A stretch of 64,000 nucleotides of DNA from IMG/VR virus record IMGVR_UViG_3300012988_000016, positions 244,896 to 308,895 of that record; one strand, written 5' to 3'. The position numbers were made by a program, and so were the translations under genes. Under the pieces are notes generated by a model, which was given only the letters and a program-made list of their open reading frames with translations, did no database searches and was not told the origin of the DNA. Shown piece by piece: positions 20,174 through 59,937 of this stretch; positions within the stretch are counted from its first letter, which is position 1, and each line of letters begins with the position of its first letter.

Positions 20174-21349
20174 ATGCCAGCTACCGCCCTACTTAAATTT
20201 GCACAAGCTACGGTTGGAACTGGTTTGGCTGGACAGGCCTTTGCAGGGGTGCTGGGCCAACTAGTAACGGTCACCAATAGTGACAACACAGGGGTGGCGA
20301 GTTGGCAGATTGATCTGCTGTACGCCGCTCCTGGCAGTACCACTCCTGCCACCACCGCCTTGGCTTTCAGTGACAATGGTGCGACCCCTACCGTCACCTT
20401 CACGCCCAATGTGAGGCGTAGTTACCGTTTTCAACTCAAGGTGTGGAACGTCCCTAATAGGGTGGGGATTCCTGACATCGATATTCGTGTCTTCAGTGTT
20501 CGGGAATTGAACAACCTGTTCGTCCCTCCAGTCCAGATCTACCCACTACCTCTACCAGATCCTCAATCTAGTCTCGCAGGTGCCAAGCCAAATGAGATGA
20601 ACTTTGGAGGGCAATCAGGAGGTTGGGCAGGCGGTATTGATGCGGACGGTCTGCTGAATGACTTGATTGCCAGACATTTGAATGTAGCAGGCACTCCAGC
20701 TATCGGTAAGTTCATCGGGTACAACGGCACCACCCCCATATGGTCGATCCCTGGAGGGTTGGTGATCACTGGGTTCAACGTATCGGTGGGTTTGCTGGAA
20801 ACAGGTCAGATCATCAACAATCCGTCGTTCTCGGCCAGCTACAATACTGCTCCCGATAGTGTGACGTTGATCAACAACGCAGATGCTGAATCGAAAGATG
20901 TCAGCGGTACTCCCAACAGCTTTTCAAGCAGCCACAGTTTCCAAAAGAACGTCCCCAATCAATCGGTCACCTTCACCATCACTGCCACATTGTCGGGGTC
21001 AGCCAACGCTACCGCCAATGCGTCGATTACATGGGGTCAGAAGAACTTTTGGGGAGTCAGCAGTACGCCGGCCAACACTGAGGCTTTCATTGAAGGTTTG
21101 GCTAGCAATTCGTTGAGTACTTCTCGAAATGCTTCTTTCTCAGTCAACGCAACTGCTGGCACAAAGATCTACTACGCATGTCCCACTCGTTATGGAACTC
21201 CCAGTTTCTCAGTAGGTGGGTTCACAGGTGGATTCATCCAACGAGCTACAGGCATTAGTGTGACAAACGCCCAAGGATTCATCGAGAACTACGATCTCTA
21301 TGAGAGCGTATCAGTAGGTCTCGGACCAACAACTGTGAATGTATCATGA
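20174..21349 (+). CDS. putative virion structural (tail/fibre-associated) protein
   Basis: 391 aa, Thr/Ser/Gly/Asn-rich beta-strand pattern; ATGA-coupled to the giant fibre gene. Confidence 0.65.
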
Positions 21350-24300
21350 GTATCAATCAACCTGGTGACGTAACAGTTATTGCCCCAATCTCTGTACCTG
21401 GGGACGCTAATGCGGCAGTTCGTGCCGCATCTGTATTGGGCGGATTCGTAGCAGTAGTCGATACTACTGAACGAGATTTGATTCCCTCTAGTTCTCGAAA
21501 ACAAGGTATGTTGGTACATACCAATGATGGGACGTTCTATGTATTGGGGGCGGGTCTCACAAATGCCGATTGGGCGATCACCTCAATAGGTGGTGATTCC
21601 AGCTTCATGATCGTGGCTGACAACACAGCTCGCAACGCCATCCCTTCAGGGGCTAGGCGAGAGGGTATGTTGGTCTACAGCAAACTGACCAAAGTCTACT
21701 ACTCCCTAAACAGCGACCTGACGACCTGGACATTCTTTAGTGCCAGTCACTCCCTCGCACTGCAGACCGACTGGTACATCAACGCCTCAACTGGCAATGA
21801 CAACAATGATGGTAAGGTCGGCAACCCATTAGCTACAGTTGAAGAGCTGACTGCACGCCTAAATCCGAATGGGGCGAAGCTCGTTCTGTCACAGAATACC
21901 ACAATCCACATTGCGGCCGGTACCTACAATTTCTTCGACATCAATCTAGATATACCGATTGGTTCAAACTACATCTTCAAGGTCCTGTGTGATTACACGT
22001 CGTCTGCCCCCATCACCCTGAGTGGCGTCACCAACACGGTCGGTAGTGCTACTCCGACTCGTGGAAGTATACAGACAGCTGCTGGAACCTTTGTCGATAA
22101 GGCAAGAATCAGAAGCACCTCGGGTGCGGCGGCTGGAGCAATCACCTACGTGACTGGCCTGACCAGCTCAACCAACGCTTTCGTCAAAACCTGGTTTCAG
22201 GAGACGACCCCCAGCAGCTTCGGGGTCGTCAATGTGGCGAGCGGCACCACAGTGGTGATCGACACCCTACAGGTGACGATCAATCGACTGCGAATCCGAA
22301 CCACCAACAATCCGCTTAGCGGCGTTGTGAGTGTTTGGGACGCTATCCTGCCGGCCGGCGCCGAGTTCGTGAACGTTGCTGCCGGCAGCGCCGCCGTCTA
22401 CCTGTCGCAATGCCAGATCGGCGGTGGGACGTCGACGAACACCAAGCTCGTCGGCAATATGCAGGCCCGGAACAGCCGTCTTGTCGGGGCGAGCATCTCA
22501 CCGTTCGCGGTCTCCTTTCACGGCAACTCATCCCCCGTCTTGCAGGGGTGCGTCATCGAGTGCCCCATAACCTTCCTGACCGCGCTCGTCATCCCCGTCG
22601 GGAGCTGCTTCAACGGAGGGACTGTCACCGGAGGCGACCCGGCCGGCGTGTTTGGTGCCGGGAGCCTAAGCCTCTCTGACACCGAGTGGGTGAACGGCTC
22701 CGGAACCGCCGTGACCCTGAACTACGGGTGCCAGATGTATATCTTGGGCCAGCAGTTCGGCTTCGGGACCCCGTACGCCGTCGGATTCGCCCTGACCGCG
22801 CAGACCTCCGTGGCTGTGGCCTCGTCCACCTACCTAGGGATCCTCGCGACCCAGCAGATCACGATGGTCGGGCACAAGCACACGTACGCCCAGGTTCCGA
22901 TCTCGTACCCGAACTCAGAGTGCATATTCGCCCTCGCCTCCGACCCGCTAGGCATCCCCTACGGGTTCCCGGCACAGACGGCCACGGACTGGTACGTCAA
23001 CGCCTCTACCGGCAACGACTCCAACGATGGTCTGACCGCCGGCACTGCCCTCCGAACAACGGAGAGGTTGGCAGCGATCCTATGTCCTGGCGGCACCACC
23101 CTCACAGTTAGACAGAATACAATCGTTCACTTGGCGGCTGGTACCTATGATGCCTTGGAACTAAGTCTGACGATCCCCGTTGGTTCAAACTACACGTTCG
23201 AGGTGGTGTGTGCCTACACCTCATCGGCCCCCATCACCCTCTCAGGTGTGACCAACACGGTTGGAACTGTAACTCCTGTCCGAGGTAGCATCCAGACCGC
23301 TTCAGGCACGTTCGTCGACAAGGCTCGTATCCGTTCAACTTCAGGTGCCTCCGTTGGAGCCATCACCTACTGTACAGGTCTAACGAGCAGTACTAATGCC
23401 TTCGTCAAGAGCTGGTACCTAGAATCCTCTACATCTCAAGTCAACATTGTGAACGGCACGACCGTAACGGTTGACACCCTACAGGTGACGATCAATCGGG
23501 TCCAGATCCGCACTGTAGGGAATCCACTCAGCGGGGCGATCACCGTTAGAGATGCGATCCTACCGAACGGTATGGAATGCTTATTCTTGGGAGGCAGTTC
23601 TCAATTTGTCTTCTCTCAATGCCAGATCGGCGGGACACTCCCCAATGCCTGCCGAGTATCAGGCAACATACAGATGGCGAATTGCCGTTTCACCGGCACT
23701 CAAGTCTTGGGATTCGCTCAAGGAAGTTCTCCCGTTTTTGCAGGGTGTGTGCTTGAGATCAAAGCACTGATCTATAACAACGTCTCGGAATTTCAAGCCA
23801 ACTGCTTCAATGGAGGTAGTGTTGAATTGGGAGATCCGACTGCCGCTCTTCAAGCGAGTCTCATACTTACCGACAACGAATGGGTGAATGGCTCTGGAAC
23901 GGCTATCGCGGTATTCCCTGGTAGTTATCTGAGAATCACAGGTCAACAGTTCGGCTTCGGCACCAATTACGCGGTCGGCTACAACGTGACGGCAGGTGGT
24001 CATGTCGTCACCAATTCGACCGCTATACTGAGCATACCTGCTACTCAGCAGATCACGATGGCTGGGAAGAATCTCAACTACGTGGATGTGCCCAGGTCTT
24101 ATCCGAATGCGGATTGTGTTTTTGCTCTAACGAATGACCCTAATCCGATTCCTTTCGGAAACACTACCGCTTCTTCGCAAGCTGCCTGGTACATCAACGC
24201 TAGTACGGGCAATGATGCGAATGACGGCAAGACAAGCGGTACCGCTCTCGCTAGCCTCGACGAGCTCCGAAACCGTCTCAACCCCAATGGAGCCTGGTAT

Positions 24301-27300
24301 ATCCCCGCTCAAAGCACGACCGTGTTCATTGCGGCCGGTACCTACAATGCTCTTGAGCTCAGCGTCAGCATCCCCGTTGGCTCAAACTACGTCTTCGATG
24401 TGAAGGGGGACTTTACCTCCAGTAGTCCGATCACCCTGTCTAGTGTGACCAACACGGTTGGATCTGCCACTCCCACCCGAGGTGCCATTCAAACTGCCTC
24501 CGGTACTTTTATCGACAAAGCTCGTGTTAGAAGCACCTCGGGAGGCTCCACAGGAGCAATCAGCTATATCACTGGCCTGACAAGCTCAACTAACGCTTTC
24601 GTCAAGAAGTGGTTCAACGCTACCTCGTTCAGCGAAACGACGGTTGGTCTCAGTTCAACAGTGGTGATGGACACCTTACAGGTGACGATCAATCGTGTCC
24701 AGATCCGAACCAGCGGTCATCCACTTGGTGGGCAGATTCACGTATACGACACCATTTTGCCTTTCGGGGCAGAGATCGTCAATCAGGTAGGGGGCAGTGC
24801 CTCATTGGCACTAGTCGGATGCAAGATTGGCAATTCTGGCTCAGTAACGGCCCGTGTTTCTGGTAACGTTCAGCTGCAAAACTGCCAGATTACAGGCACT
24901 CAACCCGTGTCGATGTTCAGCGGCGTGGTGCCCGTATTTGCTGGATGTGTGATCGAGAATCAAGTGTTGATTTACTCGACAACACAGATCTATGTCGCCA
25001 ACTGTATGAACGGCGGTTCGATCTACGCCTCTGGTACTACAGCTGTTGTGCCGGCCAATCTATCGATCGCTGATTGTGAGTGGGTTAACGGAAATGGATC
25101 CACAACAGCCATCACGGTCGGACCTAGATGTGGGATTCAAATATTTGGTCAGCAATATGGGTTTGGGACCAACTATGCGGTTGGCTTCGCTCTGACGAGT
25201 GGGGCAACCGTCGTCACAGACTCTGTTACAAGTTTGGGTATTCTGGCCACTCAACAGATCACCATGACGGGCCACAATTTGAACTATTCAAATGTGCCTC
25301 GAAGCTACCCTAATGCCGATTGTGCTTTCGTATTGCTGAACGATCCTGCCGCAGTTGCGTTCACCTCAGCTCGTTTTGGCGCCACTTTCTACGTAGATCC
25401 GGCCTACACTGGATTCTCGAACGGCACTCAAGCCAACCCATATCCAAGCATCACCACCGCCATAGCGGCCGCTCCTTCGACTGGTGCGCTGATCTTTATG
25501 GCGCCGTATTCGACCACAGTTGAGAACGTCACGTTCCCAACAACTGGTGTTTGGGAGGTCCGGTCTGAGGCCGAGGTGGGGACTACCATCAACGGCAACA
25601 TCGTGTGTACGGGTGGTGCTGGTGCGGCCGTTACCCTGACGACTCTGATCGTTACTGGTACGGTGAGCGGTGATTTCACGTCGCCAACTGGTGGACGTTC
25701 TCTGATCCTGAACAACACAGATATCAATGGGGCTGTGAGCCTGACGTCCACTGCCGGCAACCGCTGGACCCTTATCCTAAACGGACTAGGCGGTTCACTG
25801 GCGGGTCTTAATGGTGCGTTGAAGTCAACGGCATCGGTCGTTGGCGCCATCCAGGCGTCCAACTACTACATGGTTGGCGCCGTGTCGTTCTCAGCAGCTT
25901 CGCAGCTAAATAACTGCCACCTGACTTCTGGCAGCATTGGTGTGGGTGCGAATGTTTTGATTGAGAACACTGTGTTCGACTCAGCTGTGACGTTCACGGG
26001 AGCAGGGGTTGTGACGATTGATGGTGAGAGCCACGCTTCCGCAAAGGCAGTTGGTGCCATCACACTAGCGGGTGGTGCGACACTTGTGATTCGAAACAGC
26101 GTCTCTCTTGTGGGTATCCAACAAGACGGGGCTCTTGATACGCAAGTACTTGCCTGGAACAACTCGCTCTCTAGATGGAACCCTTCCTCTGTTGTGGGAC
26201 CTGCTGGACCCACAGGACCCGTTGGTCCGACCGGACCTACAGGTCCCACTGGTGCGACTGGCGCCACTGGAGCAGGCACCACAGGTGCAACTGGCCCGAC
26301 GGGACCTGCTGGACCAACTGGACCTGCAGGTGCCACGGGTGCCACAGGAGCTACTGGGGCGACCGGCGCAACGGGGCCAATAGGTCCAACGGGGCCGACA
26401 GGGGCTACAGGTCCCATCGGACCCACAGGTGCAACGGGCCCCATAGGTGCCACAGGGGCAACGGGAGCTACAGGATCGACTGGTGCCACAGGGGCTACTG
26501 GTGCTACTGGACCAACGGGTGCCAGCGGAACTTCAACCGTAGCGGCTACGTCTCCTATCACGGTCAGTACAGTAGGGTCTACCTCAACCATCGGAATCAT
26601 TCATCTTTGGGAGTTCACGATCGGTAACGGCACAACTACATTCGGCGATTTCAATGGTGCGTCTGCCGTTCGAGATGCCGTCACCTATGCCAACACTGTG
26701 GTGGGCCCTCTTGGAACTCCGTGGCAGCTCAGCCTCTTGATGAAAGTCGCTAGCTGCGACATCAACAACGGGGCCGGCAGCACTCTCATCATACCTGCAG
26801 ACTGCACTCTGAAGATCCGAGGATCTGGCTACAACCTAACCAGCAACAATTCGAAGCTGAACATCAATGGTAATGGTGGCTTCGAAGTAATTGGATCACT
26901 GTTCTTGGAGAATGTGTTGCTCCAAGGATCTGGCAGCACCCCATTGGGGTTTGCTATCATGAATTCTACGGCCGCTGTTCTTGGGATGCGAGACTGCTAT
27001 GTGCAGAACAGCTACCTTGATTGGCGTCAATCCAAAGGTCTAAAGACCGTCATTGAACGGACTTCTTTCGAAGCTCAAAGTAGTGACGCTAACCCCCTGA
27101 TCAGCATCAGTGGTGGGAGTGGCGGATATTTGGGGCATCTCGTGTTCTCGGAATGCACTTTCCAAGGAGTTGTTGATCGTACGTTAACTGCTTTCGGCCC
27201 AAGCAGCAACTCCTCATGGGTTGATCTGACTTTCGTACGATGCACTCTACGTTGCGCGGGCAATAGTGTGGCGGTCTCCAACAGCGTAACCAACGCCAAT

Positions 27301-28686
27301 AGCGGAGTGCTGAATGTATTCCCAGGTGGTGGTTCGGTCCCCAGTCGAATCAACGTCAAGTATTTGGATTGCAACGTATGGTCTGACGCTATCGTGGGGG
27401 GTGGTGGAGCTGGTGGGGCGATCCTCATGTATCTGACTAGTTCTGGTACTGGAGGAGCCGCCACCACCATTGATCTGGAAATCAATGGTGGGCAATGGTT
27501 GGCAAGTCCCAGCATCTACAGCGGTATCAACACCCCTTTCTACATTGGACCCAGGACTTGGGCAACTTCCGTAGATAATAACGGCATACGTAGTGTGTTG
27601 ATCAATAACGTTAGGATGGGTTGGGCAGACATCACTGGAGTGTTCAACGGAACACTCCATTATGGGCTTCCTGCATCCGAGATCAGTTACGGTGGGGACT
27701 CTAGGGCGTGGGCTGCCTTCACGGTGTACGCCCATAACACTAGAGTATCAAGGATCACCCTAGGAGGTATGGTCCAAGACTCTGATAGGGCGGACTTCGC
27801 ATTCATCGGTATTGACCGTTGCGAAGTAGAGGATGTACAGGCAGAGGGCGATTGGCAAGCTACCGGCTTGGGTACGTATCCAAAAGGGCGGTTCATCCTA
27901 TACCCAACTGTCAACTACAAGACCAAAAATGTGGCCCGCTATTCAAAGATCGCATACGGTAACTTTGAGGCGGCAGCACAAGCCAGCACCAACGATGGTG
28001 GGGTTTTCTGCGAATGCACCTTTCCGGACTCTGGTGCCCACCCGCAAGGTTGGGTGTTGTCAGATTCTACCGCTATCCTTTCATCCAACTGCCCGATCGG
28101 TAACGGAGTGTTCGTTGGCAGCGACAACAACGTTGTCTGGAGAACAATCGAGCGTTGTACTCTGATAGGTAATCTGAATCTAGCGACAGATGGTGACGGG
28201 GTAGCCTGCTATTCGCTCACCACCACCATAAATTTGGTTGTGAGAGATTGCACCATCAGTTCTTGGATAGCATGCGGCGTTCTTGTATCGACCAACACTA
28301 CGTTCGGTGGTACTTGCGAAATCTCTAACAATCGCATCGACAACTGCAGTCTTCCAGGGATCTACGTTCTGGCAAGTGCTTGGAGCTACATCGGCCCCCG
28401 CATCCTAGGTAACAATGTCGAGCATTGTGACGAAGGGGACTATCCGCACCTACACAGCCAAATTCGTGTCGGGCACCCCTCTGTCGACAATACAGTTGCC
28501 ACTATCGTTGGCAACTCTTGCGACCTCGGTGGTGGGATTGAAGTCCTTTCCTTAGGCTACATGTACGTCGCTGGTATGGATATGTTCAACTACGACACCA
28601 ATGTACCAATCTTAATCTCAACAACACCCTTGAGCGGTACGAGGCTCCGTCAGAACTATGCCGTGTGGAGAAGCGGGCTACACTGA
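21346..28686 (+). CDS. giant tail fibre/adhesin-like protein with three tandem beta-helix-like modules, a collagen tract and a C-terminal beta-helix
   Basis: 2446 aa; WY(I/V)NASTGNDxNDG three times; YVDP...[11 protein letters not shown]; (Gxx)n; C-terminal ISNNRI/ILGNNV/IVGNS repeats. Confidence 0.8.
21763..25360 (+). repeat. three ~1.2-kb intragenic tandem repeats
   Basis: Units start near 21763, 22975 and 24178; shared SSxPITLSxVTNTVG...GTFxDKARxRSTSG...DTLQVTINR. Confidence 0.85.
26197..26532 (+). repeat. collagen-like GPT/GAT triplet repeat
   Basis: About 110 aa of Gly-X-Y with one short interruption. Confidence 0.9.
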
Positions 28687-52757: not shown

Positions 52758-52952
52758 TGATGATAGAACGGCCATGGTGGGGAGAAGTTAAGGCTCACCA
52801 CAGCTTCGGTAATTTTCGAATCCCCCGGTCGATCGCCAACGCTAGGCAGATCACCACATTGTTGACCAGCTCTTCCATCCTAGCATCGAGGCGGGCCAGG
52901 ATCCCTTTGGGCTTTTGAGGCATCGGTCCTCAGCTTAGCCCAAAGGGGCCTA

Positions 52953-55523: not shown

Positions 55524-55553
55524 GATTGATGGAACGGAACCTAGGACGGGAAG

Positions 55554-55793
55554 TTAAGCTCCAACCACGCAATAGAGCGTGCCTGGATTGAGGCGTTCGA
55601 GCTCTAGGCGACGAGCATTCGCCTCAGCGGTTTGCTCAGCCGTGAAGGCGTTTAGGCGGTATTCTGCTGAGGTGAATCGGGCTCGACTAACCGATCCATC
55701 CTTGTTGAGGCGTTTGACCAACAGGGTCTTGGTTGAGACCATATCGGTCCAATGTTTGGCCTGTAAGGCTCGGAAGGCGGCGGTGGGTTTCAT
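55554..55793 (-). CDS. hypothetical protein
   Basis: 79-aa ORF behind a structured leader. Confidence 0.65.
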   Translation of the reverse strand: MKPTAAFRALQAKHWTDMVSTKTLLVKRLNKDGSVSRARFTSAEYRLNAFTAEQTAEANARRLELERLNPGTLYCVVGA

Positions 55794-55813
55794 GAGCTTT
55801 GGTTGGAAAAGGG

Positions 55814-55875
55814 ACGCTGACCGTGCCGGCCCAGTCCCTAGGGCCTATCGGGCGTCGGACTCACCGGTCAGCGTT
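55814..55875 (-). ncRNA. structured leader or small RNA
   Basis: Class A motif 55882-55909 predicts +1 at 55875; 10-bp stem ACGCTGACCG/CGGTCAGCGT enclosing a GGCCC/GGGCC hairpin. Confidence 0.5.
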
Positions 55876-55985
55876 ACCTACTAGAACGGATGGGGGAGCG
55901 AGAAGTTAACCCTCTTGATACACCCCTATGTTGGGTTAACGATGGCCCTTGTTACTCAATCGGATAAGTAAACTGCGAGCAAAAA

Positions 55986-56011
55986 TGACCGAAAACGCCT
56001 ATTCTAGGACA
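55986..56011. promoter_or_regulatory. Xer-type-site-like imperfect palindrome
   Basis: TGACCGAAAA-cgccta-TTCTAGGACA (7/10 arms, 6-bp spacer), 43 nt upstream of the recombinase-like gene. Confidence 0.4.
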
Positions 56012-56054
56012 CAGTTTCGATGTATGTAGAATCTACTTGTAAGGCGAGCCATGT

Positions 56055-57059
56055 ATGCATCACGAGAAATTGCTCGAAGCGTGGTTGGCTGGATACGGGG
56101 GAGCCACCCTCATAGCGTACAGACCGGTCGCCCAATCGTTCCTAACTCAGGTCCCTCTTGAGATGCCGGCCATCCAGGCATGGGCCGAATCGCTCACAGG
56201 AAGTCCCTCAACAAGAGCGAGGAAGGTCTCGACCATTGTCAGCCTATTGACCTTCGCCCACAAGCACAGATACGTTGAAGAGAACTTGGGACTGTCTTTG
56301 AACCGTCCCAAGCAGACACCCAAGAAAGTCGTCCCTGTCGACACAAGCCTGATCCAGGATCTGGTTGGCGCTGCCAACGGGGAGCGGGACCGCCTCTTGA
56401 TTCGAGTGCTCTATGAGACCGGCAAATCCCCAGAGGCCGTCACCAAGCTTCGGTTCAAGGACTTGGATCAGGTCTCTGACGGATTGAAAGCTAGCCTGCT
56501 TGAGTTCCAAAAGGACGCCAGCCCTGAGCGGCTTGTGTTCCTATCATTTCGAAACCAAAAGCTTTCTGCCAGAGATGCCAGACGTATGGTACAGCGTGCT
56601 GCAACGGAAGCCGGCTTGGATGAGTTGGGGACGGCCTGGCTTCGCAAGGCCCATCACTGGAAAGACCCGAAACCAGTCCGAGCTTGGAATATTCGACAGG
56701 CTGCCTCGGGGCCGTTCGGAATCATCTACGGTCTGAGGGACCCAAGAACCAACGATCTCTGCTACGTCGGTATGACCCGTCTAAAGCTCCAAGAGCGGCT
56801 GAGGTGTCATCTGTCGAAGGCCAACCTAAAGACCCGTAATCGGGCTTCTGGATGGCTTCGGGGCCTCCTTGCAGACGGGGTTCGCCCTGTGGCTGAAGTG
56901 TTGGCAGTCGCCAAGGATCGGGACGAGCTGCTCTACCTGGAACGCTATCACATCAGCCAAGCCCGCTCGGAGGGACATCCGCTGGTCAACAGTACGCACG
57001 TCTGGAGCCTGAGGAAGATTCAAAAGAGGCTCAGAGGCGACATGAGTCGCTGGGCTTGA
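56055..57059 (+). CDS. degenerate tyrosine recombinase fused to a GIY-YIG-like endonuclease domain
   Basis: Core-binding domain; RDRLLIRVLYETGKS; WLRKAH; then IIYGLRDP...YVGMT...R...H...E. Confidence 0.75.
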   Translation: MHHEKLLEAWLAGYGGATLIAYRPVAQSFLTQVPLEMPAIQAWAESLTGSPSTRARKVSTIVSLLTFAHKHRYVEENLGLSLNRPKQTPKKVVPVDTSLIQDLVGAANGERDRLLIRVLYETGKSPEAVTKLRFKDLDQVSDGLKASLLEFQKDASPERLVFLSFRNQKLSARDARRMVQRAATEAGLDELGTAWLRKAHHWKDPKPVRAWNIRQAASGPFGIIYGLRDPRTNDLCYVGMTRLKLQERLRCHLSKANLKTRNRASGWLRGLLADGVRPVAEVLAVAKDRDELLYLERYHISQARSEGHPLVNSTHVWSLRKIQKRLRGDMSRWA

Positions 57060-57307
57060 CTGGTGGTACCTATCGGCCAGCCGACCAAGACGTTACTTGG
57101 TGTAAGGCCTGCATGGTGAAAATCTTTCTAAGGGTGTTGGGCGAAGACCATTACGCCGAACACATGGTCTCCCGAGTTCCCGGTCTTAACGAGCTGGTGG
57201 CTAGGGATGACGGTTCCTATCTGGTCAAAACCGTCTGTCATCACGTAGACCCTGTGGAGGGTGAAGTGGTGGCGACGGTCCTAATTGAGAGGCCCCAGCG
57301 AACATGA
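57056..57307 (+). CDS. hypothetical protein
   Basis: Coupled ORF. Confidence 0.5.
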   Translation: MTGGTYRPADQDVTWCKACMVKIFLRVLGEDHYAEHMVSRVPGLNELVARDDGSYLVKTVCHHVDPVEGEVVATVLIERPQRT

Positions 57308-57507
57308 CCGTAGGCGAACTCAAGCTCTTCCTCGCCAACTCTGAACTCCCCGATTCGGCAGAGGTGGTGATCCCTGGCCGACACTCCCTCCACGTCTGTC
57401 AGGCGGCTGAGACCACCATCGGGGACATCAACCACTACGGGCAGACCAGCTGGAAGCCCAACGGTGGCGACCCCGCACTGATCCTTCAGGATTGTTCCAC
57501 GGGTTGA
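57304..57507 (+). CDS. small phage protein (MTVxEL type)
   Basis: MTVGELKLFL...LPDSAEVV. Confidence 0.65.
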   Translation: MTVGELKLFLANSELPDSAEVVIPGRHSLHVCQAAETTIGDINHYGQTSWKPNGGDPALILQDCSTG

Positions 57508-57509
57508 GC

Positions 57510-57755
57510 ATGAACTTCTTCGATGAAGCACAGCAAGAAGTAGCGGAAGCCGAGGAACGCCGCTCCAAAGAACGTACGAGGCAGGACATGACCAAGCAAG
57601 AACTGATCAAGCTCTTGAAGGAGCAGCTCAGGATCGAGGTACGGTCGGAGGATCGAAACAACTACCTCAGCGGGCGATGTCAGCGGGTCAGGGTCATGCT
57701 CTTCTTGGGGGATGAGCTGATAGCCGAAGATTCGGCCGATTTGGGGACGGGCTGA
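57510..57755 (+). CDS. hypothetical protein
   Basis: Start MNFFDE. Confidence 0.6.
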   Translation: MNFFDEAQQEVAEAEERRSKERTRQDMTKQELIKLLKEQLRIEVRSEDRNNYLSGRCQRVRVMLFLGDELIAEDSADLGTG

Positions 57756-57757
57756 CG

Positions 57758-58024
57758 ATGAACCGTGAAACCAGAGAAGAGGTGATTCGCCTGTTGTCCG
57801 AGATGACAGGGGAATCGGACTCGATCCAGATTCAGACGATGCGGATCCCCGCCTGTATGGTGCGACCAGGCGATCGGTGGCCCTGCTATCAGAAGCCCAC
57901 ACTTGTCGTAAAGACGGTGCTTAATTCAAACGAAACGATGAGGTTCACGTTCGAGGACGGCCGCACAAGCACCACCTGGGCTAGCGGGACATCGATTGAG
58001 GTGGTGCGGCTGACGGCTATCTAG
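57758..58024 (+). CDS. small beta-barrel protein
   Basis: Similar to 15867-16064. Confidence 0.6.
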   Translation: MNRETREEVIRLLSEMTGESDSIQIQTMRIPACMVRPGDRWPCYQKPTLVVKTVLNSNETMRFTFEDGRTSTTWASGTSIEVVRLTAI

Positions 58025-58097
58025 CTGCTTTCACAGCTCGTTTTGACCCGAACGAGCTGTAGGGCTGGTGTAAGTGAGGGGATGAAAGGAGGTTCTC

Positions 58098-58313
58098 ATG
58101 CAAGAAGGAGACCTCGTTACGTTGAAGACAGCGGACAGCCCCATCATGGTAATCGAAAGTTTCCAGACGGGTGAACGTATTGCAAAGTGTGTATGGTGGA
58201 ATCCTTGGAGTAAGGAGATCCGTCATGAACAAATATACATTGGGGGTCTAAAGGAGTATGTACCTCCAAAACCAGACAATGGTAGGACCCTAAAAGTTGG
58301 AGTAAAGCGTTAA
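58098..58313 (+). CDS. YodC/DUF2158-like protein
   Basis: GDLVTLK...PIMVI...CVWW; AAGGAGG RBS. Confidence 0.75.
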   Translation: MQEGDLVTLKTADSPIMVIESFQTGERIAKCVWWNPWSKEIRHEQIYIGGLKEYVPPKPDNGRTLKVGVKR

Positions 58314-58337
58314 CTCCCGCCCACCCCGGCCGTACTA
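58310..58337 (+). promoter_or_regulatory. class A motif driving the tRNA-like pair
   Basis: TTAACTC-N12-GCCGTACTA; no ATG at +1. Confidence 0.7.
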
Positions 58338-58373
58338 TCAATCAAGGGCAACGGAGTCATGACCCACAGCCCC

Positions 58374-58465
58374 CAGTCGAATAGTTGGCCGGTTGCCAGC
58401 ATCTGATCCAATAACTCAGAATCGGGCGAGACGTCGCCCCAGGGGTTCAACTCCCCCTCGACGGT
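58374..58465 (+). tRNA. atypical tRNA-like gene (8/4 fold, long variable arm, 9-nt anticodon loop; identity undetermined)
   Basis: D-stem GTTGGC/GCCAGC, anticodon stem TCTGA/TCAGA, V-arm GGGCGA/TCGCCC, T-arm GGGG-TTCAACT-CCCC, acceptor 6/8 paired. Confidence 0.6.
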
Positions 58466-58538
58466 TTGCGGCTAGTTCAACAGGAAGAGCGACCCTTGTT
58501 AAAAGGGAGAGAAGTGGGTTCGAGGCCCACGCCGTGAG
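58466..58538 (+). tRNA. atypical tRNA-like gene (anticodon loop GTTAA, Asn-like)
   Basis: Acceptor TTGCGGC/GCCGTGA, TA, D GTTC/GAGC, CCCTT-GTTAA-AAGGG, T GTGGG-TTCGAGG-CCCAC. Confidence 0.7.
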
Positions 58539-58541
58539 CAA

Positions 58542-58745
58542 ATGGCACAACTGACCGAAGAACGGCGAGCCTACTACGAGAAAGCGATCCTCGACTACGA
58601 ACAGTTCCTGGCCCGTCCCCATCCAGAGCACTTCTACAGCAAACCGATCAAGTTCCCCGCCAACTTCGACCCTAAGCGGACCAACCATACCCACATCCTC
58701 GCCCTGATCCAAGACGCCAAAGAACAGCTTGAACCAAATGGCTAA
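58542..58745 (+). CDS. hypothetical protein
   Basis: 67-aa ORF right after the tRNA-like pair. Confidence 0.55.
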   Translation: MAQLTEERRAYYEKAILDYEQFLARPHPEHFYSKPIKFPANFDPKRTNHTHILALIQDAKEQLEPNG

Positions 58746-58950
58746 GTGCCGCTTCTGCCATGCCCCATCTGGCCAGCCTCACGATCGGACCATCCCACAC
58801 GGCGATCCATTCAACCGGAACTTCGTTGGCGATGTGGCCCAATGCGGTTGCAGGTGGGAGCGACAACCAGGCTATGGAGACGTGCTGATCTTATGCCCGA
58901 TCCACAGTGAGATCAATCGAATTGAGTATCTCAATACTCAATCTAGCTAG
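58738..58950 (+). CDS. small Cys/His protein
   Basis: CRFC...CGC...CPIH. Confidence 0.55.
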   Translation: MAKCRFCHAPSGQPHDRTIPHGDPFNRNFVGDVAQCGCRWERQPGYGDVLILCPIHSEINRIEYLNTQSS

Positions 58951-58970
58951 TTTGGTGTAAGATTTGGATC

Positions 58971-59345
58971 ATGAAACGTAGCCCCGCCATCCTCCACATA
59001 GCTCAAGATCTACAGTGGACCCCTGAGGATGTCCTCACGCCCATCGAATCCGCCTACCAACGCCTCAAACTGGCGGGCCTCCACGTTCACCTATGTGACG
59101 ATCGACTGATCGGAGGCTCTCACTACGATGACTCGGATCATCGTATCCGTATGGTGCTGAACGGCTTCATGATCGCTCCCGAGGGAACGGGCTATCGGCT
59201 CAAGAGGGCATCCGACGGTCAGACGGACGGCATAGGGTGCCTGACGCTCGATCAAGCCATCAGGTTGGTGATCGATACGATCCAGCCTCAGCCGAATATT
59301 GAGGCCCCACCCAGACCCCCTCAAAAAGGCCCACAGCTCTATTAA
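58971..59345 (+). CDS. hypothetical protein
   Basis: Class B motif 11 nt upstream. Confidence 0.6.
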   Translation: MKRSPAILHIAQDLQWTPEDVLTPIESAYQRLKLAGLHVHLCDDRLIGGSHYDDSDHRIRMVLNGFMIAPEGTGYRLKRASDGQTDGIGCLTLDQAIRLVIDTIQPQPNIEAPPRPPQKGPQLY

Positions 59346-59369
59346 CTTTCCCCCACCTGATCCGTTATA
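59342..59369 (+). promoter_or_regulatory. class A motif driving a tRNA-like gene
   Basis: TTAACTT-N12-TCCGTTATA; no ATG at +1; CCTAGCTG/CAGCTAGG hairpin follows. Confidence 0.7.
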
Positions 59370-59437
59370 TAGATCAGAATGCATGGAGCGCCTAGCTGGC
59401 CCAAGAGGCAGCTAGGACCGAGTCAAGTCTTGGCAGC

Positions 59438-59509
59438 GATACTTTGGTGTACTGGTGCACACACCCGATAAGGGTGGAGAGTTGGGTTCGAATCCCAGCA
59501 AGTATCCCA
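59438..59509 (+). tRNA. atypical tRNA-like gene (anticodon loop GATAA, Ile-like)
   Basis: Acceptor GATACTT/AAGTATC then CCA; D GTGT/GCAC; CACCC-GATAA-GGGTG; T GTTGGG-TTCGAAT-CCCAGC. Confidence 0.75.
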
Positions 59510-59510
59510 C

Positions 59511-59714
59511 ATGAAAGAACAACTAGCCGACATCCGAGATGCCTGGCTGCTACTCATCATGATAGTGTGGTGGGTGGTGACGCTGGAGTTCCAACGCTGG
59601 GAGATTCGACGTCAGTACGCTGGTCTGACCAGGCAGCTTGAGCAGAGTCAACTGAGGCTTCAACAACTCAAGCGAGGGGTCGGGACAGTAGCGGTACGTT
59701 ACCGTGTAGGCTGA
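59511..59714 (+). CDS. small membrane protein
   Basis: TM segment plus coiled coil. Confidence 0.55.
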   Translation: MKEQLADIRDAWLLLIMIVWWVVTLEFQRWEIRRQYAGLTRQLEQSQLRLQQLKRGVGTVAVRYRVG

Positions 59715-59937
59715 ACAACTATCGGCGGCCGACTGGCCTGGCTCCCCATAGCGAAGCTACGGGCCGGCCCACCAGCCGCCGCTAAATGACCGTCTGGCCG
59801 AACCGATCGATAATCCGTTCGGGCTGTACAGATCTCCCAAAATGGCGTATCCAGTATGCGCCCCGCTCAAAACGGCAAATAGGTCAAATCCCCCTATCTA
59901 TCCAAATTTTTATCGACCGGCCATTTTTGGCTCGATC

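What the first reader, a model, noticed from the sequence alone, without database searches (positions are those of the whole stretch)
58466..59509. Two tRNA-like genes share the same odd 5-nt anticodon loop (GTTAA, GATAA)
Seen: both have good acceptor, D and T arms, but their anticodon arms read CCCTT-GTTAA-AAGGG (58493-58507) and CACCC-GATAA-GGGTG (59462-59476). Known: canonical Asn and Ile loops are CU-GUU-AA and CU-GAU-AA with near-invariant U33. Both genes look like these minus the CU. Forcing a 7-nt loop puts G at 33 and gives anticodons TTA (ochre) and ATA. The second gene also has a 6-bp T-stem and CCA with no discriminator base. The same defect in two unrelated, separately promoted genes suggests selection rather than decay. 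Inference: non-decoding tRNA mimics (decoys for anticodon nucleases or synthetases, stringent-response modulators) or frameshifting tRNAs.
Basis: partly seen in the sequence, partly recalled or inferred. Interest (0 to 1): 0.78.

Follow-up and report, generated by a model that had tools for sequence, protein, structure and literature searches.

The report
Closed-anticodon tRNA look-alikes in a huge phage
A roughly 475-kb soil phage that already has 42 normal tRNAs also carries three separately placed tRNA-shaped genes whose anticodon arms are abnormal, so they probably cannot decode in the ordinary way and more likely act as processed tRNA mimics, though no function or expression has been shown.

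Summary
Gene #1 (58466-58538) and gene #2 (59438-59509) fold as cloverleaves with a 5-bp anticodon stem and a 5-nt loop (GUUAA, GAUAA). Independent assemblies from other soil samples carry identical sequences, so this is not an assembly error.

The two defects are not the same. #1 has a normal 17-nt arm; it reads as a 7-nt loop U-G-UUA-A-A with G33. #2 truly lacks two nucleotides. Its arm equals the E. coli tRNA-Ile(GAU) arm minus C32-U33.

It resembles an allo-tRNA, has a 9-nt loop and abuts #1.

The host is a huge phage. Its main array lies about 100 kb away and holds 42 normal tRNAs, including Asn, Ile, His and Ala, plus a tmRNA. The phage also encodes RtcB, an RNA ligase and a CCA-adding enzyme.

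Each odd unit follows a copy of a promoter-like motif that occurs five times in the genome. In each, a conserved 67-aa ORF starts 3 nt after the discriminator base. #1 carries G3·U70 and #2 carries G-1:C73, both anticodon-independent identity marks.

Best reading (confidence about 0.4): non-decoding tRNA mimics excised by RNase P and a 3' nuclease. Decay into pseudogenes remains a serious rival. No orthologues and no usable RNA data were found.

The parts
58310..58338 (+). Promoter-like motif, copy before #0/#1 (TTAACT, 17 nt containing CCCACC and CCG, then TACTAT). It overlaps the TAA stop of ORF 58098-58313.
   Evidence: Five copies in the 309-kb record match TTAACTnnCnCCCACCnnnnCCGTnnTAT with at most 3 mismatches. 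In two other copies an ATG ORF starts 4-5 nt after the motif.
58373..58465 (+). #0: a 92-93-nt irregular tRNA-like gene that resembles an allo-tRNA. It has U8-A9, a 6-bp D stem with a 5-nt loop, a 5-bp anticodon stem with the 9-nt loop UCCAAUAAC, a 6-bp variable arm and a 4-bp T stem. Its roughly 8-layer acceptor has a bulged A58375. It ends where #1 begins.
   Evidence: ARAGORN at a lowered threshold scores it 97.6. RNAfold gives a cloverleaf, z = -2.7. The Rfam tRNA-Sec model scores 26.5 bits, which is not specific because ordinary tRNAs score 20-40 bits with it. The stem parse is by hand.
58466..58538 (+). #1: a tRNA-like gene with canonical numbering. Acceptor U1-A72, U2·G71, G3·U70, and discriminator G73. 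Elbow nucleotides are canonical (U8, A14, G18G19, T54-T55-C56, A58). No CCA is encoded.
   Evidence: Rfam tRNA 29.3 bits. CM R2 matches tRNA-Asn of relative G004 best, at 48.9 bits.
58493..58507 (+). Anticodon arm of #1: CCCUU-GUUAA-AAGGG. In the canonical register this is A27·A43, four Watson-Crick pairs, U32-A38, G33, U34-U35-A36 and A37.
   Evidence: The 5-nt form folds at -25.4 kcal/mol and the 7-nt form at -22.9.
58542..58745 (+). 67-aa ORF whose ATG lies 3 nt after the discriminator of #1 (G-CAA-ATG). There is no room for a Shine-Dalgarno site outside the tRNA.
   Evidence: It is intact in the second haplotype with one amino-acid change. It has no homologue beyond this phage.
59342..59370 (+). 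Promoter-like motif, copy before #2. It overlaps the TAA stop of ORF 58971-59345.
59391..59416 (+). 8-bp hairpin (CCUAGCUG / CAGCUAGG) in the roughly 60-nt leader between the motif and #2.
   Evidence: Read directly. It is identical in both haplotypes.
59438..59509 (+). #2: a tRNA-like gene. A 7-bp helix runs from G59438:C59506, followed directly by CCA, which is the tRNA-His-type G-1:C73 geometry. The D stem is compact (5 bp with loop CUGG). The T stem has 6 bp, giving a 13-bp acceptor/T stack. The T loop is UUCGAAU.
   Evidence: The body 59437-59507 is identical in both haplotypes, while 59508 C>T turns CCA into CUA.
59462..59476 (+). Anticodon arm of #2: CACCC-GAUAA-GGGUG, 15 nt. It equals the E. 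coli tRNA-Ile(GAU) arm CACCC-CUGAUAA-GGGUG minus C32-U33.
   Evidence: The 5-nt loop form folds at -26.9 kcal/mol, the 7-nt loop form at -22.0 and the Ile register at -14.0.
59511..59714 (+). 67-aa ORF (a hydrophobic helix followed by a coiled coil) whose ATG lies 3 nt after C59507.
   Evidence: The start and reading frame are kept in the second haplotype despite 17 nucleotide differences, which give 7 amino-acid changes.
56055..57059 (+). Context: a 334-aa ORF with an integrase-like N-terminal part and a GIY-YIG nuclease domain. It is probably a mobile homing endonuclease and not part of the RNA genes.
   Evidence: The cassette is absent in strains L072 and L073.

Best explanation
The locus holds three tRNA-shaped RNA genes that no longer serve ordinary decoding. 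#0 and #1 form a head-to-tail dimer, and #2 stands alone. Each unit sits between a copy of a phage promoter-like motif and a small conserved ORF.

Inferred steps. The units are transcribed at the 5' end of short operons. RNase P and a 3' endonuclease, which recognise the intact acceptor stem and T/D elbow, cut them out. The phage's own CCA-adding enzyme can finish the 3' ends. Cutting at the 5' end of #1 would also create the 3' end of #0. Excision leaves the downstream mRNAs with only about 3 nt before the AUG. This fits a phage in which the same motif elsewhere sits 4-5 nt from an ATG, giving leaderless-type messages.

The released RNAs keep the tRNA body, but the anticodon arm is shut by a stable G-N-U-A-A pentaloop. 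This loop matches the GNRA-like fold of P22 boxB GACAA, in which the third base flips out. A closed arm would keep these RNAs out of normal codon reading. They carry anticodon-independent identity marks: G3·U70 in #1, G-1:C73 in #2 and a long variable arm in #0. They may therefore still be bound or charged by AlaRS, HisRS and SerRS.

The most likely use is as tRNA mimics in the tRNA-centred conflict with the host, acting as a sink or decoy for tRNA-binding enzymes. The excision itself also serves to form mRNA 5' ends.

Shown here: sequence, fold, context, motifs and identity marks. Inferred: expression, processing, charging and any decoy role.
For: The folds are intact and differ from shuffled controls, with canonical elbow nucleotides. 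Other samples carry the same sequences. The phage has 42 normal tRNAs about 95-105 kb away, including Asn x2, Ile, His and Ala x3, plus a tmRNA, so the odd genes are extra. A shared 29-nt motif lies upstream of both units, and in two other copies it sits directly before an ATG. In both units an ATG lies 3 nt after the discriminator, against 8 of 118 array tRNAs with an ORF start within 16 nt. ORF 59511-59714 is maintained despite 17 substitutions. G3·U70 occurs in 9 of 10 tRNA-Ala (one Ala in relative G004 lacks it) but in only 3 of about 150 other tRNAs. G-1 with C73 occurs only in tRNA-His, in 0 of 115 others. The arm of #2 equals the bacterial tRNA-Ile arm minus CU. The phage encodes RtcB (309 bits), an RNA ligase and a CCA-adding-type enzyme, and a HisRS-core fragment inside the array. 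The body of #2 is unchanged between two divergent patches. The GNRA-like pentaloop precedent is in PMC12550061. Irregular, chargeable but non-decoding tRNAs in soil polycistrons are described in PMC5389517.
Against: No expression or processing data exist. No orthologues were found in related phages or in metagenomes beyond this one phage species, so there is no covariation test. Only two haplotypes exist, and long stretches with no differences are common here, so conservation of #2 is weak evidence. Rfam scores are at or below the tRNA cut-off. The identity marks were noticed after the fact, each has a background rate of about 2%, and #1 has G73 rather than the A73 of tRNA-Ala. ORFs that start just after tRNAs also occur in the normal array. 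A promoter that can sit directly on an ATG needs no tRNA module to make a leaderless message.
Confidence: 0.4

Rival explanations
1. These are decayed tRNA genes (pseudo-tRNAs). Old copies of Asn-like, Ile- or Val-like and class II tRNAs became stranded in a hypervariable region of ORFan genes and are drifting. The closed loops are accidents of a small deletion (#2) and of substitutions (#1). The identity marks are chance wobble pairs.
For: Rfam bit scores are marginal or below threshold. The acceptor of #1 has two adjacent G·U pairs and an A27·A43 mismatch. #2 has a shortened D arm and a U·C or extra-pair junction. The elements are specific to this lineage, with no orthologues. The region is mosaic, with a mobile GIY-YIG cassette. 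Normal Asn, Ile, His and Ala tRNAs make these copies dispensable. The same phage's array also holds a tRNA with a 6-nt loop.
Against: All four stems in all three genes remain paired and the T and D loop elbow nucleotides are intact. Damage is confined to the anticodon arm and yields perfect 5-bp hairpins ending in G-N-U-A-A in both genes. Each unit keeps a copy of the promoter-like motif. #2 has no change while its flanks carry 9-17 substitutions. They are not recent copies of any of the phage's own tRNAs.
Confidence: 0.27
2. These are decoding-competent special tRNAs. #1 opens U32-A38 to a 7-nt loop and reads UAA as an ochre suppressor with anticodon UUA and G33, charged with Ala through G3·U70 or with Asn. 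#0 reads with a C33 loop CCAAUAA. #2 causes frameshifting or miscoding.
For: #1 has exactly canonical numbering, and Rfam aligns its loop as UG-UUA-AA. Opening U32-A38 costs only 2.5 kcal/mol, as in 26 of 118 normal tRNAs. This phage clade tolerates non-U33: C33 occurs in tRNA-Val(GAC) of this phage and three relatives. Relative G004 has a stand-alone allo-tRNA-like gene with the 8/4 structure and a CUA (amber) loop. Allo-tRNAs with UUA anticodons and G3:U70 are known (PMC5389517). TAA makes up only 16% of stop codons.
Against: Treating TAA, TAG or TGA as sense does not lengthen the long ORFs, so no recoding is seen. None of about 160 tRNAs examined has G33. The loop of #2 is closed by a C-G pair, and opening it costs 4.9 kcal/mol and yields G33 with AUA. 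A 5-nt loop cannot present a normal anticodon.
Confidence: 0.13
3. These are purely cis-acting processing signals (tRNA punctuation). Their only role is to be cut by RNase P and RNase Z so that the downstream small-ORF mRNAs gain defined 5' ends near the AUG. The released RNA has no function, as with the tRNA-like mascRNA of MALAT1 or mitochondrial tRNA punctuation.
For: In both units the ATG lies exactly 3 nt after the discriminator. The phage seems to use leaderless starts, with the motif 4-5 nt from an ATG in two copies. The parts that RNase P and Z recognise are kept while the anticodon loop is not. Rfam's mascRNA model gives weak, sub-threshold matches to #2 (16.6 bits) and to the array's 6-nt-loop tRNA (25.1 bits).
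Against: The same promoter motif can give a leaderless message without any tRNA module. This reading does not explain the shared G-N-U-A-A loop, the Ile-identical stem or the identity marks. No end-mapping data exist.
Confidence: 0.15
4. These are attachment-site remnants: partial host tRNA copies next to an integrase, as in temperate phages that integrate into tRNA genes.
For: The integrase-like ORF 56055-57059 lies 1.3 kb upstream. The arm of #2 matches a bacterial tRNA-Ile arm. IMG/VR labels two relatives as proviruses.
Against: The ORF carries a GIY-YIG nuclease domain, its integrase match is below Pfam's cut-off, and it is a presence/absence cassette. The elements are complete cloverleaves rather than 3' halves. 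Outside the arm, #2 does not resemble bacterial tRNA-Ile. Each unit has its own promoter-like motif.
Confidence: 0.03

Closest known systems
Irregular tRNA and allo-tRNA polycistrons from forest and peat soil (Mukai et al. 2017, NAR, PMC5389517)
   Same: Soil origin. An allo-tRNA-like gene (long variable arm, long D stem with a short loop, long acceptor with a short T stem) is joined head to tail to other irregular tRNAs. The published set includes members with G-1 that HisRS charges but that do not decode, and members with G3:U70 and UUA anticodons. Some allo-type tRNAs occur in phage tRNA clusters.
   Different: The published examples have 7-nt anticodon loops as far as the text says, and are assigned to Acidobacteria and toxin-antitoxin loci. 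Here the loops are 5, 5 and 9 nt, the carrier is a huge phage, and the neighbours are ORFans.
Phage tRNAs with anticodon-loop changes that escape host tRNA nucleases (van den Berg et al. 2023, PMC10264068; T5 tRNAs against retron and PARIS, PMC11555353, PMC11464382)
   Same: A phage rich in tRNAs and carrying tRNA repair genes. The alterations are concentrated in the anticodon loop. C33 variants are common in this clade.
   Different: Those tRNAs remain decoders with 7-nt loops and replace cleaved host tRNAs. #2 cannot decode, and the phage already has normal counterparts.
mascRNA / MALAT1-type tRNA-like processing modules and mitochondrial tRNA punctuation
   Same: A cloverleaf with a good acceptor, D and T arms but a small, non-functional anticodon loop, which RNase P and RNase Z use to define the ends of a neighbouring RNA. 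The module sits directly against the neighbouring message.
   Different: These are eukaryotic or organellar systems. The Rfam matches are far below threshold (16.6 bits against a cut-off of 42.5). Here the module lies upstream of the mRNA, not at its 3' end.
boxB-type GNRA-like pentaloops (P22 GACAA, lambda GAAAA)
   Same: A 5-bp stem capped by G-N-N-A-A. GAUAA differs from P22 GACAA only at the base that flips out (PMC12550061).
   Different: boxB is a stand-alone hairpin in nut sites and is bound by N protein. Here the hairpin replaces the anticodon arm of a cloverleaf. The fold is inferred, not tested.
tRNA-Other of Bacillus cereus (a pseudo-tRNA charged non-canonically)
   Same: A tRNA-like small RNA with an irregular anticodon region that is charged but is not a normal decoder (cited in PMC5389517).
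   Different: It is chromosomal and bacterial, with a different structure. No sequence comparison was made.

Membership tests
Canonical elongator tRNA (Rfam RF00005) | Score at or above the family gathering threshold (29 bits) | tested here: inconclusive
   #1 scores 29.3 bits, just above the threshold. #2 and #0 get no tRNA-model match; their best match within the clan is tRNA-Sec at 24.4 and 26.5 bits.
Canonical elongator tRNA (Rfam RF00005) | 5-bp anticodon stem with a 7-nt loop and U33 | tested here: not met
   #2 has a 15-nt arm with a 5-nt loop. #1 has a 17-nt arm but G33 and a pairable U32-A38. #0 has a 9-nt loop.
Canonical elongator tRNA (Rfam RF00005) | Elbow nucleotides (U8, A14, G18G19, T54-Psi55-C56, A58) and four paired stems | tested here: met
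   All are present in #1. #2 has U8, GG in a short D loop and the T loop UUCGAAU.
tRNA-Asn(GUU), for #1 | Loop C/U32-U33-G34-U35-U36-A37-A38 with G73 | tested here: not met
   G73 and U1-A72 are present, and the best CM match is tRNA-Asn of G004 (48.9 bits). But GUU sits at positions 33-35, one nucleotide out of register, and there is no U33.
tRNA-Ile(GAU), for #2 | Loop CU-GAU-AA on stem CACCC/GGGUG, with A73 | tested here: not met
   The stem and GAUAA are identical to E. coli tRNA-Ile, but C32-U33 are absent and the discriminator is C. The rest of the molecule is unlike tRNA-Ile.
tRNA-His, for #2 | G-1 paired with C73, giving a 13-bp acceptor/T stack and a 3-nt CCA tail | tested here: met
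   G59438:C59506 is followed directly by CCA. The stack is 7 + 6 = 13 bp. G-1 with C73 occurs only in tRNA-His among 118 tRNAs of relatives.
tRNA-His, for #2 | Anticodon GUG in a 7-nt loop | tested here: not met
   The loop is GAUAA. GUG occurs only in the 3' strand of the stem.
tRNA-Ala, for #1 | G3·U70 wobble pair | tested here: met
   The acceptor strands UUGCGGC and GCCGUGA give G3·U70. It is found in 9 of 10 tRNA-Ala and 3 of about 150 others.
tRNA-Ala, for #1 | A73 discriminator and an Ala anticodon (NGC) | tested here: not met
   The discriminator is G73. No NGC triplet occurs in the loop.
Allo-tRNA (8/4 or 9/3), for #0 | 12-bp acceptor/T branch made of a long acceptor and a short T stem, a long variable arm, and a long D stem with a short loop | tested here: inconclusive
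   The 4-bp T stem, 6-bp variable arm and 6-bp D stem with a 5-nt loop fit. The acceptor reaches about 8 layers only with a bulged A and a terminal mismatch (hand parse). The tRNA-Sec model score is not specific.
Nonsense-suppressor tRNA | Anticodon complementary to a stop codon in a functional 7-nt loop, with in-frame stops or read-through genes in the genome | tested here: not met
   UUA falls at positions 34-36 of #1 only if the loop opens, and then with G33. There is no sign of recoding.
Any functional tRNA-like RNA | Expression, end processing and aminoacylation | not testable with these tools
   One RNA run holds 6% of the sampled words. The read-laying cap had already been used on DNA runs.

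The most novel reading that the evidence does not exclude
A previously undescribed class of phage tRNA mimics. These would be full tRNA bodies with anticodon-independent synthetase marks, whose anticodon arm is deliberately capped by a GNRA-like G-N-U-A-A pentaloop. In #2 the arm copies the host tRNA-Ile stem. The mimics would be made from their own promoters to bind and neutralise tRNA-targeting host defences such as anticodon nucleases, or to carry amino acids without entering the ribosome. Their excision would also launch near-leaderless mRNAs.
Probability: 0.2. Interest if true: 0.8.

Novelty: new variant of a known kind. Interest (0 to 1): 0.5.

Why it matters
Phage tRNAs are now seen as weapons in a conflict over the host's tRNA pool. 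So far the known strategy is to supply nuclease-resistant replacement tRNAs or to repair cut ones. A tRNA-shaped RNA that cannot decode, yet keeps everything needed for processing and perhaps charging, would be a third strategy: mimicry or decoy. It would also be a natural example of a tRNA body with a redesigned anticodon arm.

The finding also shows that tRNA finders mislabel such genes; here they were called Leu(taa) and Tyr(ata). Huge soil phages hold irregular tRNAs of the kind first seen in soil metatranscriptomes. If the genes are merely decaying, the locus is an ordinary by-product of a large phage tRNA repertoire.

Tried and rejected
- blastn of the locus against 50,697 phage records found no match.
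- Neighbour-protein and DNA-pattern searches in IMG/VR for syntenic relatives found nothing.
- A homologue search with ORF 58542-58745 returned only itself.
- tblastx of window 48-64 kb against the tRNA arrays of relatives found no shared genes.
- The stop-codon recoding test was negative.
- The Rfam tRNA-Sec matches of #0 and #2 first looked meaningful. They are not specific, because ordinary tRNAs of these phages score 20-40 bits with that model.
- I first thought the odd genes were the edge of the main tRNA array running off the contig. That was rejected: longer assemblies place the array 95-105 kb away.
- The pattern scan for CCC-GATAA-GGG followed by a T loop returned a mixed set. IMG/VR hits were C33 tRNA-Ile-like genes and two poorly formed tRNA-likes. 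Bacterial-genome hits were one normal tRNA-Ile with C33, tRNA-Ser variable arms and non-tRNA sequence. This is not a family.
- The #1 pattern hit only non-tRNA sequence, in one ordinary IMG/VR contig and one giant-virus MAG.
- The exact #2 arm with a T loop occurs in JGI metagenomes only in this same phage.
- CM R1 (#2) found nothing in five related records.
- An 'Ile register' for #2 (loop CCGAUAA with C33) aligns without gaps to tRNA-Ile. It is 13 kcal/mol worse and leaves no workable D arm, so it was rejected.
- Host identification through capsid and ATPase searches failed.
- Pfam and PHROGs gave no confident match for the neighbouring small ORFs; two had only weak sub-threshold Pfam hits.
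- The sigma-70 consensus scan found nothing above chance.
- Conservation of #2 between haplotypes was downgraded once the mosaic divergence pattern was seen.
Full report
WHAT IS THERE

The window is the last 64 kb of a 308,895-bp IMG/VR virus record from soil (GC 52.8%, CheckV completeness 65%). ARAGORN finds exactly two tRNA genes in the whole record. One is at 58466-58539, called Leu(taa), score 104.4. The other is at 59439-59509, called Tyr(ata), score 103.3. Rfam's tRNA model reaches its threshold only for the first, at 29.3 bits against a cut-off of 29.

RNAfold gives both a cloverleaf in which the anticodon arm is a 5-bp stem with a 5-nt loop. The closing pairs have probabilities of 0.97 and 1.00.

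THE SEQUENCES ARE REAL

Contigs assembled from other soil samples carry the locus. They include a 475,623-bp ENA contig, which matches CheckV's size estimate and is probably the near-complete genome. There are two haplotypes, which differ at 32 positions across 58098-59797. #0, #1 and the body of #2 are identical in both, with no indels.

Among about 160 other tRNAs of this phage and four relatives, none has a 5-nt loop. One has a 6-nt loop.

THE TWO ARMS ARE NOT THE SAME DEFECT

#1 has exactly canonical numbering: an 8-nt D loop, a 5-nt variable loop and a 17-nt arm. The 27-43 pair is an A·A mismatch, pairs 28-42 to 31-39 are Watson-Crick, and U32 can pair with A38. A pairable 32-38 also occurs in 26 of 118 normal tRNAs in relatives. 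Opening it costs 2.5 kcal/mol. Rfam aligns the loop as U-G-UUA-A-A. What is odd in #1 is therefore G33, with UUA at positions 34-36, and not a missing CU.

#2 really is short. Its arm has 15 nt and a C-G closing pair, and opening that pair costs 4.9 kcal/mol. Its stem and the GAUAA are identical to the E. coli tRNA-Ile(GAU) arm CACCC-CUGAUAA-GGGUG without C32-U33. An ungapped 'Ile register' (loop CCGAUAA) is 13 kcal/mol worse and leaves no usable D arm.

A THIRD GENE WAS MISSED

Directly upstream of #1, ending at 58465, lies a 92-93-nt cloverleaf, #0. It has U8-A9, a 6-bp D stem with a 5-nt loop, a 6-bp variable arm and a 4-bp T stem. Its acceptor has about 8 layers with one bulged A, and its anticodon loop is the 9-nt UCCAAUAAC. 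This architecture resembles an allo-tRNA. #0 and #1 form a head-to-tail dimer with no spacer.

GENOMIC CONTEXT

A second IMG/VR contig, G001, is the same phage: the capsid region is 99.9% identical. Longer assemblies show that the phage's main tRNA array lies 95-105 kb downstream of the odd genes. The array holds 42 distinct normal tRNAs and a tmRNA. These include two tRNA-Asn (loop CUGUUAA), tRNA-Ile(GAU), tRNA-His and three tRNA-Ala.

The odd genes are therefore extra copies. They are not close paralogues of any of the phage's own tRNAs. Covariance models built from them give two results. #1 matches tRNA-Asn of relative G004 best (48.9 bits; the phage's own Asn scores 33 bits). #2 has no counterpart in five related records, and its best match among the phage's own tRNAs is the C33-type tRNA-Val(GAC) at 29 bits. 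The exact #2 arm followed by a T loop occurs in JGI metagenomes only in this phage.

The phage also encodes RtcB (309 bits), an RNA ligase and an adjacent CCA-adding-type nucleotidyltransferase. A 171-aa HisRS-core fragment lies inside the array. tRNA supply, repair and maturation are clearly a theme of this genome.

TRANSCRIPTION-UNIT ANATOMY

A 29-nt motif, TTAACT-nnCnCCCACCnnnnCCG-TnnTAT, has sigma-70-like spacing and occurs five times in the record. One copy lies at 58310, before #0/#1, and another at 59342, before #2. Both overlap the stop codon of the preceding ORF. In two other copies an ATG ORF begins 4-5 nt after the motif, which suggests leaderless messages.

In both odd units a 67-aa ORF starts exactly 3 nt after the discriminator: G-CAA-ATG at 58542 and C-CAC-ATG at 59511. 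This leaves no room for a ribosome-binding site. ORF 59511-59714 keeps its start and frame in the second haplotype despite 17 substitutions, which cause 7 amino-acid changes, so it is a real gene. Such tight tRNA-ORF junctions are not unique to these units. Eight of 118 array tRNAs have an ORF start within 16 nt.

IDENTITY MARKS

The acceptor of #1 reads U1-A72, U2·G71, G3·U70, with G73. G3·U70 is the AlaRS mark. Here it occurs in 9 of 10 tRNA-Ala and in 3 of about 150 other tRNAs.

The 7-bp helix of #2 starts with G59438:C59506 and is followed directly by CCA. With the 6-bp T stem it forms a 13-bp stack. This is the G-1:C73 geometry of bacterial tRNA-His, and it explains the 'CCA without discriminator'. 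G-1 with C73 is found only in tRNA-His among 118 tRNAs of relatives. The CCA reads CUA in the other haplotype, so it is not essential as encoded. The phage has its own CCA-adding enzyme.

#0 has the long variable arm used by SerRS-type recognition. All three marks work independently of the anticodon. These are leads noticed after the fact and are not proof.

LOOP TYPE

Both loops read G-N-U-A-A. The P22 boxB pentaloop GACAA adopts a GNRA fold with its third base flipped out (PMC12550061). GAUAA and GUUAA fit the same scheme. A stable capped hairpin would keep the RNA from acting as an adaptor. This is inference only.

INTERPRETATION

The best reading (confidence about 0.4) is that these are non-decoding tRNA-shaped modules at the head of small operons. 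RNase P and a 3' nuclease would excise them and the CCA enzyme would finish them. They would act as tRNA mimics, possibly charged and possibly decoys, in the conflict over tRNAs. Excision would also leave near-leaderless mRNAs.

The closest published parallel is the set of polycistrons of allo-tRNA-like and other irregular tRNAs from soil described by Mukai et al. That set includes G-1 species that HisRS charges but that do not decode, and G3:U70/UUA allo-tRNAs (PMC5389517).

Rival readings:
- Plain decay into pseudogenes (0.27).
- Purely cis-acting processing signals (0.15).
- Decoding-competent suppressor or miscoding tRNAs (0.13, mainly for #1). No recoding is seen. However, non-U33 tRNAs are common in this clade, and relative G004 has a stand-alone allo-tRNA-like gene with the 8/4 structure and a CUA loop.
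- An attachment-site remnant (0.03).

LIMITS

There are no expression data. One metatranscriptome holds 6% of the sampled words and could not be examined further. There are no orthologues, so no covariation test is possible. Divergence between the two haplotypes is patchy: there are no differences over 55550-58550, and patches of change at 59163-59283 and 59508-59725. The unchanged body of #2 between two patches is therefore only weak evidence of constraint. The host is unknown.

Noticed in passing
window 58373-58465: A third irregular tRNA-like gene abuts #1 with no spacer. It resembles an allo-tRNA: long variable arm, 6-bp D stem, 4-bp T stem and a 9-nt anticodon loop UCCAAUAAC. If U·C closes the loop, it reads CC-AAU-AA with C33.
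   Followed up: partly
window 58310, 59342, 52763(-), 45950(-); G000:226592(+): A promoter-like 29-nt motif, TTAACTnnCnCCCACCnnnnCCGTnnTAT, occurs five times. In two copies an ATG follows 4-5 nt later, suggesting leaderless mRNAs. The copy at 52763(-) is followed by about 260 nt with no ORF, possibly another non-coding RNA.
   Followed up: partly
window 56055-57059: A 334-aa ORF combines an integrase-like N-terminal region with a GIY-YIG nuclease domain. The cassette, together with three small ORFs, is absent in strains L072 and L073, which is typical of a mobile homing endonuclease.
   Followed up: partly
L079:1-11200, L075, L044 (same phage, 95-105 kb downstream of the window's odd genes): The main array holds 42 distinct tRNAs and a tmRNA (72.8 bits). 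It contains oddities of its own: a 70-nt tRNA with the 6-nt loop CUAACC, a 73-nt class I-sized 'Leu(UAA)' with C33 (loop CCUAAAA), and tRNA-Val(GAC) with C33. The C33 Val is also conserved in relatives G002, G004 and G005.
   Followed up: partly
L075:2909-3424: A 171-aa fragment of a HisRS catalytic core (PF13393, E = 1.7e-18) lies inside the tRNA array, next to tRNA-Ala. This is notable because #2 has a tRNA-His-type acceptor end. The same region encodes a ThiF-like protein, an aminotransferase, two HNH nucleases, and a histidine kinase with response regulators.
   Followed up: partly
G001:120591-121841; G000:142185-142712; G000:141345-141809: The phage encodes RtcB, an RNA ligase (PF09414) and an adjacent CCA-adding-type nucleotidyltransferase. 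Together these form a tRNA repair and maturation kit.
   Followed up: partly
L059 (G004:214853-214945, + strand): A related huge phage has a stand-alone 93-nt allo-tRNA-like gene of the 8/4 type, with an 8-bp acceptor and a 4-bp T stem. It has G73-CCA and the anticodon loop CUCUACA, which carries CUA (amber). It lies about 10 kb outside the main array, on the opposite strand.
   Followed up: partly
L049, L050 (relative G005): Several class I-sized (74-76 nt) tRNAs carry Leu anticodons (UAA, GAG, UAG), although bacterial tRNA-Leu normally has a long variable arm. Their identity is unclear.
   Followed up: no
L069 (ENA ERZ27311763 k141_787616): This 475,623-bp contig of the second haplotype is probably the near-complete genome. 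One contig end lies 188 nt upstream of the GIY-YIG ORF.
   Followed up: no
window 21346-28686: A 2446-aa ORF, the largest in the window. It was not examined.
   Followed up: no
L060:3065-3141 (Gammaproteobacteria MAG): A bacterial tRNA-Ile(GAU), in an Ile-Ala pair of the kind found in rRNA operons, reads CACCC-CCGAUAA-GGGUG. This means C33 instead of U33. It may be real or a sequencing error.
   Followed up: no
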